A DNA stretch of 63,636 bases, filler included, from Sluysia triapertura (Eukaryota), in NCBI GenBank assembly GCA_046118255.1. It is 5 parts of 5 records of this genome, joined end to end, with 100 filler letters (N's around TTAATTAATTAA, not from the genome) between each part and the next. Parts side by side here need not be neighbours in the genome. Positions count along the whole stretch, not along the records: positions 39,773 to 51,557 come from JBJNIA010170924.1; 4 more parts are not named here. The stretch is one strand, 5' to 3'. Of this stretch, positions 48,060 to 49,787 are shown piece after piece. Under the pieces are notes generated by a model. The model was not told where the DNA came from. It searched no databases and saw only the letters and a list, made by a program, of their open reading frames with translations. How positions within the stretch are numbered: position 1 is the first letter of the stretch; each line of letters begins with the position of its first letter. Both the position numbers and the translations under genes were made by a program.

Positions 48060-49787
48060 CACCACAAAATTCAACAATCATGCAAAACTTCGACGTGATG
48101 CTATTTCAGAAGTTATCAAAGAAGTACTCAGAAAGGCAATTAGTAAAGATCAAGATATCTAAAGGTTCATAAAAAGCAATTAGTAATCAAAGAAATTACT
48201 ATGTACATAAACCATTTTAGTCTTTGGAGTAGTACTGCATTAGCAACTTTATAAAGAAACATCAATTTGTTTTAGTTTTAATGTATTAACATTTGCACTA
48301 AGTTATCATTTTAGTAACGCTACCATTTCTGAATCTATACATGTCGATGATTCCGAAATTAACTTAAGTTTTGATGCAGTCTTATGGAGAAATATCGACG
48401 TTGATAGAAAAGTCAATGGAAAATTAATTACGAACTCCACTAGTTTCGTGAAATGGTTTGTGTTCAATATTTAAAGTTCCTTATACGAATTTATGACAAT
48501 TTTAAAAGATGATTTACGACACAATCATTTACAATATTGAACATGTCTTTTCCTATAAAAGTCAATTTAAAAGTAAGAATTTGTAAATATCTTCTATCTG
48601 TCTTTTATAATTCATTTCCTTTAGGATTCTTTGACTTTATGTGTTATATTTCGTGTTAGGTATTTTTTATTAAATTTTGATCTTTTTAATTAAATTTAGA
48701 TTGTTATTTTGATTGACTCTATATCATATATCATATAATTGGTCATTAGACAAAATTTATCTAGATATATCTAATAATCCGTACAACGTTTTGTTTGAAG
48801 CTCGTATGTTACCTTATTATATCAAAGTTCTTTATGAACGCAAAAAATGCAAAATATATTATGGCCTTCCTATCCATCATGTTCGAAAAAGATCCGTAAC
48901 ACTTTGGAATTAGTGTCTACGAACAATATGGCTAATTTAAAATGATTAAAATCGGATAAACTCCGATGACATGCTACTCCAATTGTGATGAAACACAAAG
49001 ATATCATTAGTTTATCTGAAACCTGTAGTAAAAAACTGTTACTTATTATGTTCAAGTAACCTTTGATGTACATAAAGACTTTGATTACTACAATTGAATT
49101 GATAAAGCAAGAATGTGGTAAATTATTGAAGAAAAGTGAAGGATTAAATCTAAATATAATGCATTTAACTGAAGATATAGATGTGACTGATCGAATTACC
49201 TAACTTAGAAATTTTGATTTCGACACTGTTGCAACAATTACTAGTCAAATTTTGATGGTACTACATCATAAGAATCCAATTAGAGAAATTTTTTATTCTA
49301 TTCAACAATTATCAATTGATCAGGGAGATAAAATGATAAGTTATCAATTAATCCATAACATCGATAAAGTTTTACGAATTTTACCATCCGAATCACGCAG
49401 TAAAGATAGAAGAATAATCAAAAGAATTTTAGATAATCAAGAAATACACATGACGCAGTAGTTGTTTTTATGAATTTAAAATTCAATGAATCAAAAAATG
49501 TTGATTCCCATCATCATAGAATTGGCTTTAGTTCAACAAGCTTTAATATGTGTTACAAGACGGCTCTTTGCCCATTTGCTACAATGCAGGATGGAAAATG
49601 TAAAAGATTTAGCCTAAAATGCAAATACCTCCATTCCATTAATGAATTAGAAGAGTTTCATAATAGAATAGCTCATTTATGTGCTGATCTCAGTACTAAA
49701 GCTACAATTCTACGATCAGATGAAAATTCTCTCAACAACTATAAATTAGTGAAACCTGGTCCAGAGGAAGGCATATCCAAAATTTAA
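48060..49787 (+). pseudogene. Unidentified repeated-family copy E ending in a CCCH zinc finger
   Basis: G-free leader 47788-47900, then LSYHFS, LYHISYNWSLDKI..PYNV, LITTIELIKQE and YKTALCPFATMQDGKCKRFSLKCKYLH (49554-49634). AATAAA lies ~40 nt after the stop. Confidence 0.65.

What the first reader, a model, noticed from the sequence alone, without database searches (positions are those of the whole stretch)
49554..49634. ZFP36/TIS11-like CCCH finger shared by two distant copies with identical spacing
Copy E has YKTALC-x9-C-x6-C-x3-H. Copy A (7385-7465, minus) has KHTAQC-x9-C-x6-C-x3-R, and both share CPF, G.C, F and C.Y. The YKTxLC lead-in is characteristic of TIS11/ZFP36 RNA-binding fingers, but their usual spacing is C-x8-C-x5-C-x3-H. 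This is the strongest single piece of evidence for homology and the only functional clue. Inference: an RNA-binding module.
Basis: partly seen in the sequence, partly recalled or inferred. Interest (0 to 1): 0.72.

Follow-up and report, generated by a model that had tools for sequence, protein, structure and literature searches.

The report
Zinc finger inside a broken repeat
The motif is a real RNA-binding-type CCCH zinc finger with unusually long loops, but it sits in one decayed copy of a DNA repeat present tens to hundreds of times in this very AT-rich genome, not in a working single-copy gene.

Summary
At 49554-49634 (+) the frame reads YKTALC-x9-C-x6-C-x3-H, the only such pattern in the six frames of the piece, and it never arose in 300 shuffles. 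A profile of 26 TIS11-type fingers scores it at 23 bits; 5,000 shuffles reached at most 10.7. A HMMER search of 1.84 billion proteins returned only five hits, all multi-finger YKTELC proteins (E 9e-7 to 5e-4). The best solved relative is tristetraprolin. Pfam CCCH models match only below their cut-offs.

It is not a ZFP36/TIS11 member. There is one finger, not a tandem pair, and each loop is one residue longer.

The context changes the reading. In the only public run holding this DNA, 925 contigs fit 47800-50100 at 80% identity or more, and depth falls to single-copy level after about 49956. Most copies differ from the window where it carries two in-frame stops, the ATG of the 105-codon ORF and one frameshift. 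The window copy is therefore a broken member of a high-copy family.

The upstream frame has no recognisable domain or relative. The class of the repeat (mobile element or amplified gene) and the organism remain unknown. RNA binding is inferred, for intact members only.

The parts
49554..49634 (+). CCCH finger with its lead-in: YKTALC-PFATMQDGK-C-KRFSLK-C-KYL-H. Ligand codons are at 49569-71, 49599-601, 49620-22 and 49632-34.
   Evidence: TIS11-finger profile scores it 23.3 bits against at most 10.7 for shuffles.
49635..49676 (+). Tail SINELEEFHNRIAH. It carries the H-x3-EL motif shared with TIS11 fingers, resembles Roquin-1's HSQEELEKF, and is predicted to be a helix.
   Evidence: helix at residues 37-48 of the model.
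49437..49787 (+). Open frame of 116 codons ending in TAA at 49785-87. The ATG at 49470 would give a 105-aa ORF, but that ATG is private to a minority of copies.
   Evidence: table 3 (49471 T>C in 14 contigs, 520 of 625 depth).
49458..49519 (+). Possible 62-nt GT..AG intron. Its removal would join the upstream frame (…HMTQ) in phase to IGFSSTSFNMCYKTALC. This is inferred only; one contig instead lacks 49459 and 49461, which joins the two frames directly.
   Evidence: Reading, and table 4. No RNA data. The joined product was not searched.
48841..49461 (+). Upstream reading frame (codons at positions of remainder 1). It is protein-like and predicted helical, but broken here by TGA 48943, TGA 48967, TAA 49057 and TAA 49201, and closed by TAG 49459.
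   Evidence: stop-poor frame. (two of the stops are sense codons in most copies). (four helices, low confidence). No family or relative found.
48713..48840 (+). Continuation of the same reading frame, displaced by one base in the window copy. Most contigs at this place carry one extra base after 48840.
   Evidence: and table 4 (68 of 89 depth).
48080..48471 (+). Lower-copy 5' part. It holds an ATG at 48080, then open stretches in two frames with many stops. Whether it codes is uncertain.
   Evidence: table 2 (depth 58-270).
47836..47953 (.). Very high-copy short segment. It is either the 5' end of the repeat or a separate small repeat, and is followed by a C/T-rich stretch at 47920-48075.
   Evidence: depth 1660-2780; loose ends at 47836 and 47898. 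(GC skew -0.25).
49826..49831 (+). AATAAA, 40 nt after the stop codon.
   Evidence: read directly.
49945..49996 (.). Zone holding the 3' limit of the repeated stretch. It is A/T-rich, and depth falls from about 420 to 15-27 here.
   Evidence: tables 1 and 2.

Best explanation
The finger belongs to a decayed copy of a dispersed, high-copy repeat family of an unidentified, very AT-rich eukaryote.

In the family, a long reading frame runs from at least about 48713, perhaps from the ATG at 48080. It first encodes a helical region with no recognisable domain. It then ends, probably across a 62-nt intron, in a single TIS11-type CCCH zinc finger whose two loops are each one residue longer than the canonical C-x8-C-x5-C-x3-H.

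Inferred mechanism for intact members: three Cys and one His hold a zinc ion. The YKTxLC lead-in and the conserved aromatic residues (Phe in KRF, Tyr in KYL) contact bases of single-stranded RNA, as in tristetraprolin/TIS11d. The protein would then bind RNA, most likely the element's own transcript if the repeat is mobile (my leaning, about 50%), or cellular mRNAs if it is an amplified host gene family.

Shown: the motif, its kinship to TIS11-type fingers, the high copy number, and the damage in this copy.

Inferred: zinc and RNA binding, the intron, and the class of the repeat.

The window copy itself is most likely non-functional.
For: - Motif and chance test.
- Kinship:
  - HMMER on 1.84e9 proteins gave 5 hits, E 8.8e-7 to 4.9e-4. 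All carry 3-11 YKTELC-type fingers, with PF00642 E 1e-33 to 1e-80.
  - A profile of those 26 fingers, built without the window row, gave 23.3 bits. The next fragment of the piece scored 2.7 and the best of 5,000 shuffles 10.7.
  - PDB best match is tristetraprolin, followed by POS-1, Roquin-1, TIS11d and Unkempt.
  - All named language-model neighbours are zf-CCCH clusters; the top score is 0.89 with 171 shared features.
  - The only chain of 48,161 with Z>=2 is a CCCH finger, 2d9m.
- Repeat: 925 contigs fit at 80% identity or more (48 at >=99, 106 at 95-99, 309 at 90-95, 462 below 90). Summed depth is 400-2800 over 48724-49650, against 15-27 beyond 49956.
- Damage: most copies read a sense codon where the window has TGA 48967 and TAA 49201. 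Most are not ATG at 49470, and most carry an extra base after 48840. Only 1 of the 20 listed majority differences inside the coding frames is synonymous.
Against: - No Pfam CCCH model reaches its gathering score.
- The per-finger E-values are modest: 0.038 for the best single domain against the PDB.
- The 26 fingers used for the profile were themselves picked by similarity to the query.
- The structure model is of middling confidence (pLDDT 69), and fold matches are weak.
- Summed contig depth is not a true copy number, and the run may hold other organisms (warning).
- No reverse transcriptase, transposase, terminal repeats or target-site duplication were found, so 'mobile element' is unproven.
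- The finger exon itself is undamaged, so a working small product cannot be strictly excluded.
Confidence: 0.72

Rival explanations
1. An expanded host gene family of single-finger CCCH RNA-binding proteins. Many recent duplicates and pseudogenes exist, the window holds one of the pseudogenes, and intact paralogues regulate cellular mRNAs.
For: - A gene-like layout: a C/T-rich leader, an ATG at 48080, a possible intron, and AATAAA 40 nt after the stop.
- No transposition enzyme and no terminal repeats.
- TIS11-like proteins are cellular regulators (abstract of PMC13406598, listed).
Against: - Hundreds of contigs spread from below 90% to above 99% identity, many with internal deletions.
- Non-coding flanks are shared, and there is a sharp drop to single copy at the 3' end. 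This looks more like a dispersed repeat than a gene family.
- No relative of the protein exists in 15 billion public proteins apart from generic finger matches.
Confidence: 0.3
2. A working small gene: the 105-codon ORF 49470-49784 encodes a free-standing single-finger protein.
For: An uninterrupted ATG-to-TAA frame of 105 codons with AATAAA downstream. The finger is intact.
Against: - The ATG is absent from most copies of the family (49471 T>C, 520 of 625 depth).
- The frame is open for 11 codons upstream of the ATG and abuts a longer decayed frame.
- No such protein is on record.
- No RNA run holds the stretch.
Confidence: 0.08
3. An intact gene read with a ciliate-type code (TAA/TAG = Gln), so that the in-frame TAA and TAG are not breaks.
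For: With TGA as the only stop, 48970-49470 is one open frame with three TAA/TAG. The DNA is as AT-rich as ciliate genomes.
Against: - In DNA this AT-rich, TGA-only frames of 100 or more codons are everywhere (78 in the piece).
- The frame is also interrupted by two TGA (48943, 48967) and a frameshift.
- Most copies read ordinary sense codons at 48967 and 49201.
- The finger frame has no TAA/TAG in 116 codons.
Confidence: 0.04
4. A chance arrangement of Cys and His in non-coding AT-rich DNA.
For: Pfam scores are below threshold.
Against: Shuffle tests. The 116-codon open frame. Specific matches in the lead-in and tail outside the ligands. Whole-library E of 8.8e-7.
Confidence: 0.02

Closest known systems
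ZFP36/TIS11 (tristetraprolin) tandem CCCH zinc-finger proteins
   Same: The YKTxLC lead-in, the Gly before the second Cys, an aromatic residue two after the third Cys, and the H-x3-EL tail. This family gives the best solved-structure hit (1m9o) and all five library hits.
   Different: One finger instead of two fingers a fixed distance apart. Spacing is x9/x6 instead of x8/x5. The Ala of F-A-H is Leu here. The aromatic residue of the second loop is shifted by one place. PF00642 scores only 13.1 bits against a cut-off of 20.5.
Roquin-1 CCCH finger (8rhs) and Unkempt fingers (5elh/5elk; Pfam PF25427)
   Same: A single or isolated finger with a KYKTxMC-type lead-in. Roquin's tail HSQEELEKF resembles HSINELEEF. 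PF25427 is the best Pfam model, and Unkempt ZnF4-6 is the top Foldseek row.
   Different: No ROQ, RING or other Roquin/Unkempt domain upstream. All scores are below threshold: E 0.17-0.38 in the PDB and Foldseek E above 5.
Generic CCCH (C3H1) motif, C-X4-15-C-X4-6-C-X3-H (Wang et al. 2008, PMC2267713)
   Same: The ligand order and spacing fall inside this broad definition.
   Different: The x9/x6 combination is not among the 23 spacing classes tabulated there. It is spelled out in none of about 8.4 million papers searched.
Nucleic-acid-binding zinc modules at the C-terminus of retroelement Gag/ORF1 proteins (CCHC knuckles)
   Same: As a way of working only: a helical protein ending in a small zinc module, encoded by a high-copy repeat.
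   Different: Those are CCHC knuckles, not CCCH fingers. No reverse transcriptase or second ORF is seen here, and the finger ORF is the last, not the first, part of the repeat. The comparison is from my own knowledge of LINE/Gag proteins. A full-text search for CCCH together with retrotransposon ORF1 listed only papers on host restriction factors such as ZAP among its top 15.

Membership tests
ZFP36/TIS11 tandem zinc-finger family | Two CCCH fingers in tandem | tested here: not met
   Only one CCCH pattern and one profile match in all six frames of the piece. No other suitable Cys/His within the ORF.
ZFP36/TIS11 tandem zinc-finger family | Spacing C-x8-C-x5-C-x3-H | tested here: not met
   C-x9-C-x6-C-x3-H. 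The alignment with 26 fingers needs one extra residue in each loop.
ZFP36/TIS11 tandem zinc-finger family | (R/K)YKTELC lead-in before the first Cys | tested here: met
   CYKTALC. K, T and L are invariant in alignment A1.
ZFP36/TIS11 tandem zinc-finger family | Binding of AU-rich elements (UAUUUAU) and promotion of mRNA decay | not testable with these tools
   Needs protein and RNA-binding assays.
CCCH (C3H1) zinc fingers in general | Ligand pattern C-X4-15-C-X4-6-C-X3-H | tested here: met
   x9, x6, x3. Definition taken from PMC2267713.
CCCH (C3H1) zinc fingers in general | Score at or above the curated cut-off of a Pfam CCCH model | tested here: not met
   PF25427 22.8 against 31.1; PF25585 19.2 against 30; PF00642 13.1 against 20.5.
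CCCH (C3H1) zinc fingers in general | Significant sequence similarity to bona fide CCCH proteins | tested here: met
   Whole-library E of 8.8e-7 to 4.9e-4 for five proteins, each with strong PF00642. Profile test.
CCCH (C3H1) zinc fingers in general | Zinc coordination and the CCCH fold | tested here: inconclusive
   AF2 model pLDDT 69. Foldseek top rows are CCCH fingers but with E above 5. VIA-align finds only a CCCH finger, at Z 2.3.
Roquin / Unkempt type proteins | Accompanying ROQ/RING domains or a multi-finger array | tested here: not met
   No Pfam family on any upstream fragment.
Transposable element | Many dispersed, diverged copies in one genome | tested here: met
   925 contigs at 80-100% identity. 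Depth is 20 to over 100 times the single-copy flank. Caveat: summed contig depth.
Transposable element | Transposition enzyme (reverse transcriptase, transposase, integrase) | tested here: not met
   No such Pfam hit on any open fragment of 47836-49960 or on five fragments elsewhere in the piece. Longer family members could not be fetched.
Transposable element | Defined termini (TIR/LTR) and target-site duplication | tested here: not met
   End-to-end alignments are no better than shuffles. A shared 8-mer at the ends arises in 68% of shuffles. Only low-complexity repeats were found.

The most novel reading that the evidence does not exclude
The repeat is a mobile element whose own protein uses a TIS11-type CCCH finger, with a previously undescribed x9/x6 loop geometry, to bind its RNA. 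Known retroelements use CCHC knuckles for this. It would be a case of a cellular mRNA-decay-type finger recruited by, or born in, a selfish element.
Probability: 0.25. Interest if true: 0.6.

Novelty: new variant of a known kind. Interest (0 to 1): 0.33.

Why it matters
It is a cautionary result. A neat ORF with a convincing RNA-binding finger turns out to be a relic copy of a repeat, so it should not be annotated as a ZFP36-like regulator.

If intact members exist, the family offers two things. The first is a natural TIS11-type finger with both loops lengthened by one residue, which tests how far the CCCH scaffold and its RNA-reading geometry tolerate insertion. The second is possibly a repeat or mobile element that carries a CCCH rather than a CCHC nucleic-acid-binding module.

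Neither point can be settled from this one copy.

Tried and rejected
- Ciliate code. Translating with TGA as the only stop gives long frames everywhere in this AT-rich DNA, so it is uninformative. It is also contradicted by in-frame TGAs and by sense codons in other copies.
- Close homologues. Word search with the finger ORF and with the 85-aa upstream piece found nothing. Exact-product look-up found nothing. Metagenome and viral loci gave no confirmed relative. The third word search was not spent on the remaining short fragments.
- Upstream domain. Pfam on nine fragments found nothing credible; the IL34 and LidA matches are noise. The language-model atlas gave scores of 0.77 or less. The AF2 single-sequence model is four helices at pLDDT 61, too weak to search.
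- Organism. No tRNA or Rfam family was found. The only run is coded and held as contigs.
- Element termini. No TIR, LTR or significant target-site duplication was found.
- Second copy or second finger in the piece. None was found.
- Programmed frameshift between the two frames. No slippery heptamer lies in 49437-49461 (read), so this was not pursued.
- Spliced product. It was not assembled or searched as one protein.
- Consensus.

Full report
**Setting.** Only 39773-51557 of the window is real sequence. It is extremely AT-rich, at 13-30% GC in 1-kb windows. It has no tRNA gene and no Rfam family. Under the standard code it holds almost no long open frames. The one protein-like region is 48000-49800 on the + strand, where GC rises to about 30% and single frames become poor in stop codons. 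The rest looks like eukaryotic intergenic DNA with (AAT)n runs.

**The observation.**
- It is the only CCCH-like pattern in the six frames of the piece.
- None of 300 block shuffles produced this spacing, and 1.3% produced any C-x7-10-C-x4-6-C-x3-H.
- It lies in an open frame of 116 codons (49437-49784), which is itself unusual at this base composition.

**Is it a CCCH finger, and of which kind?**
- Pfam gives only sub-threshold matches, all to CCCH models: zf-CCCH_UNK at E 8.9e-5 and 22.8 bits (cut-off 31.1), zf-CCCH_DUS3L at 19.2 bits, and zf-CCCH PF00642 at 13.1 bits (cut-off 20.5).
- A full HMMER search of 1.84 billion representative proteins gave just five hits, with E from 8.8e-7 to 4.9e-4.
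- All five are proteins with 3 to 11 fingers of the form YKTELC-x8-C-x5-C-x3-H-G-x2-ELR, with very strong PF00642 scores.
- Against solved structures the order is tristetraprolin 1m9o (E 0.0012), POS-1 6nzl, Roquin-1 8rhs, TIS11d 1rgo and Unkempt 5elh.
- Aligned with the 26 fingers of the five hits, K, T, the three Cys, the His and the Leu of the ELR tail are invariant. The Gly before the second Cys is shared. The window sequence needs exactly one extra residue in each loop.
- A profile built from those 26 fingers without the window row scores the ORF at 23.3 bits. The next best of 315 open fragments of the piece scores 2.7, and the best of 5,000 shuffles of the ORF scores 10.7. The caveat is that the 26 fingers were found with this query.
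- The language-model atlas puts the ORF among zf-CCCH clusters, with a top score of 0.89.
- An AlphaFold model made with alignment A1 is of middling confidence (pLDDT 69), with a helix after the finger. Foldseek's top rows are Unkempt and POS-1 but are not significant. Of 48,161 representative chains, the only one with Z of 2 or more is a CCCH finger, 2d9m at Z 2.3.

I conclude that it is a genuine CCCH finger of the TIS11 kind. It is not a ZFP36-family member, because there is one finger rather than a tandem pair and the spacing differs.

**The spacing.** No paper in the library spells out C-X9-C-X6-C-X3-H. Wang et al. 2008 (PMC2267713) tabulate 23 spacing classes without it, although their general definition C-X4-15-C-X4-6-C-X3-H covers it. 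The spacing is thus unusual but not outside the known kind.

**The context, which changes the reading.** One public run holds this DNA. It is kept as contigs, its names are coded, and it may be the source sample. Laid on 47800-50100, 925 of its contigs fit at 80% identity or more: 48 at 99% or more, 106 at 95-99%, 309 at 90-95% and 462 below 90%. Many have internal deletions or diverge at fixed points.

Summed depth by segment:

| Segment | Summed depth |
|---|---|
| 47800-47953 | 1660-2780 |
| 48031-48723 | 58-270 |
| 48724-49650 | 400-2800 |
| 49650-49955 | 210-450 |
| from 49956 | 15-27 |

The last figure matches the depth of the individual exact contigs, which is 12.6-26.8. Allowing for the tool's warning that summed depth is not a copy number, the stretch is a dispersed repeat present tens to over a hundred times. 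Its 3' limit lies near 49945-49996.

**Damage in the window copy.** The best-supported differences between the window and the other copies are telling.
- Most copies have a sense codon where the window has TGA at 48967.
- Most copies have a sense codon where the window has TAA at 49201.
- Most are not ATG at 49470, the start of the tidy 105-codon ORF.
- Most contigs at 48840 carry one more base, so the window's switch from one frame to another there is a private deletion.
- Of the 20 listed differences that fall inside the coding frames, only one is synonymous, as expected for neutral decay.
- Inside the finger, the majority differ at three sites. One difference is silent. Phe becomes Tyr after the first Cys. 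Ser becomes Gly, giving KRFGLKC, which is closer to the canonical YGLKC.
- No majority difference touches a ligand codon.
- The window copy thus carries at least four in-frame stops (48943, 48967, 49057, 49201) and one frameshift upstream of the finger.

**Gene structure.** The upstream frame (48841-49458) ends at TAG 49459. The finger frame is open from 49437.
- A GT..AG interval of 62 nt (49458-49519) would join …HMTQ in phase to IGFSSTSFNMCYKTALC.
- One contig instead lacks 49459 and 49461, which fuses the frames directly.
- There is no slippery site for a programmed frameshift.
- I take the intron as the likeliest link, but it is inference. No RNA run holds the stretch.
Exons were searched apart.

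**The upstream frame.** It has no Pfam family and no atlas neighbour above 0.77. It has no word-search relative. It is predicted, weakly, to be four helices.

**What the repeat is.** I found no reverse transcriptase or transposase. I found no terminal inverted or direct repeats. I found no significant target-site duplication; a shared 8-mer at the ends arises in 68% of shuffles. There is no second copy in the piece.
- For a mobile or retroposed element: the broad age spectrum of copies, the many deletion derivatives, the shared non-coding flanks, and the sharp 3' edge after an AATAAA in an A-rich tail.
- For an amplified host gene: the gene-like layout with a possible intron.

I lean to a mobile or mobilised element at about 50%. 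I put an amplified host gene family at about 30%, and the rest is unknown.

**Mechanism.** By analogy with tristetraprolin and TIS11d, three Cys and one His bind zinc, and the lead-in and aromatic side chains read single-stranded RNA. This rests on established knowledge of that family, represented here by PDB 1m9o and 1rgo. Intact members would therefore be RNA-binding proteins. The extra residue in each loop and the shifted aromatic in loop 2 make the sequence preference unpredictable. Nothing here shows zinc or RNA binding.

**Rejected readings.**
- Chance.
- A ciliate-code intact gene.
- A free-standing 105-aa gene.

**Verdict.** The wider finding is a decayed copy of an uncharacterised high-copy repeat that carries a variant CCCH finger. 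Interest is modest.

Noticed in passing
window 47836-47953: A short segment with the highest summed contig depth of the stretch (1660-2780). Copy boundaries lie at 47836 and 47898, and 68 contigs share a G>T at 47918. It may be a separate small repeat or the 5' end of the same element.
   Followed up: partly
window 47920-48075: A C/T-rich stretch with strong strand skew (GC skew about -0.25, GC up to 39%), just upstream of the ATG at 48080. Its composition is unlike the rest of the piece.
   Followed up: no
window 49058: Ten contigs share a different sequence (85% agreement) immediately upstream of 49058, exactly at the window's in-frame TAA. This marks a subfamily breakpoint or rearrangement.
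   Followed up: no
window 49661-49662: One contig of the run carries a 31-nt GC-rich insertion here, which is out of character for this AT-rich DNA.
   Followed up: no
window 41736-41909: An open fragment of 58 codons has a weak, sub-threshold match to PDDEXK-like DUF3799 (E 0.0014, 18.9 bits against a cut-off of 26). It could be chance or a relic of another element.
   Followed up: no
window 48873-49199 (-): A 109-codon open frame lies antisense to the decayed upstream frame. It is most likely a shadow of the coding strand, and no family was sought.
   Followed up: no
window 39773-39872, 40363-40432, 47262-47320: A 50-nt unit repeated twice at the contig end, and long (AAT)n/(ATT)n runs. This is ordinary low-complexity DNA of a very AT-rich genome.
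   Followed up: partly
window 47800-50100 (run X1): Where the window and other copies differ, window C>T (64 places) and G>A (51) outnumber T>C (35) and A>G (33). This points to an AT-biased decay of the copies.
   Followed up: no
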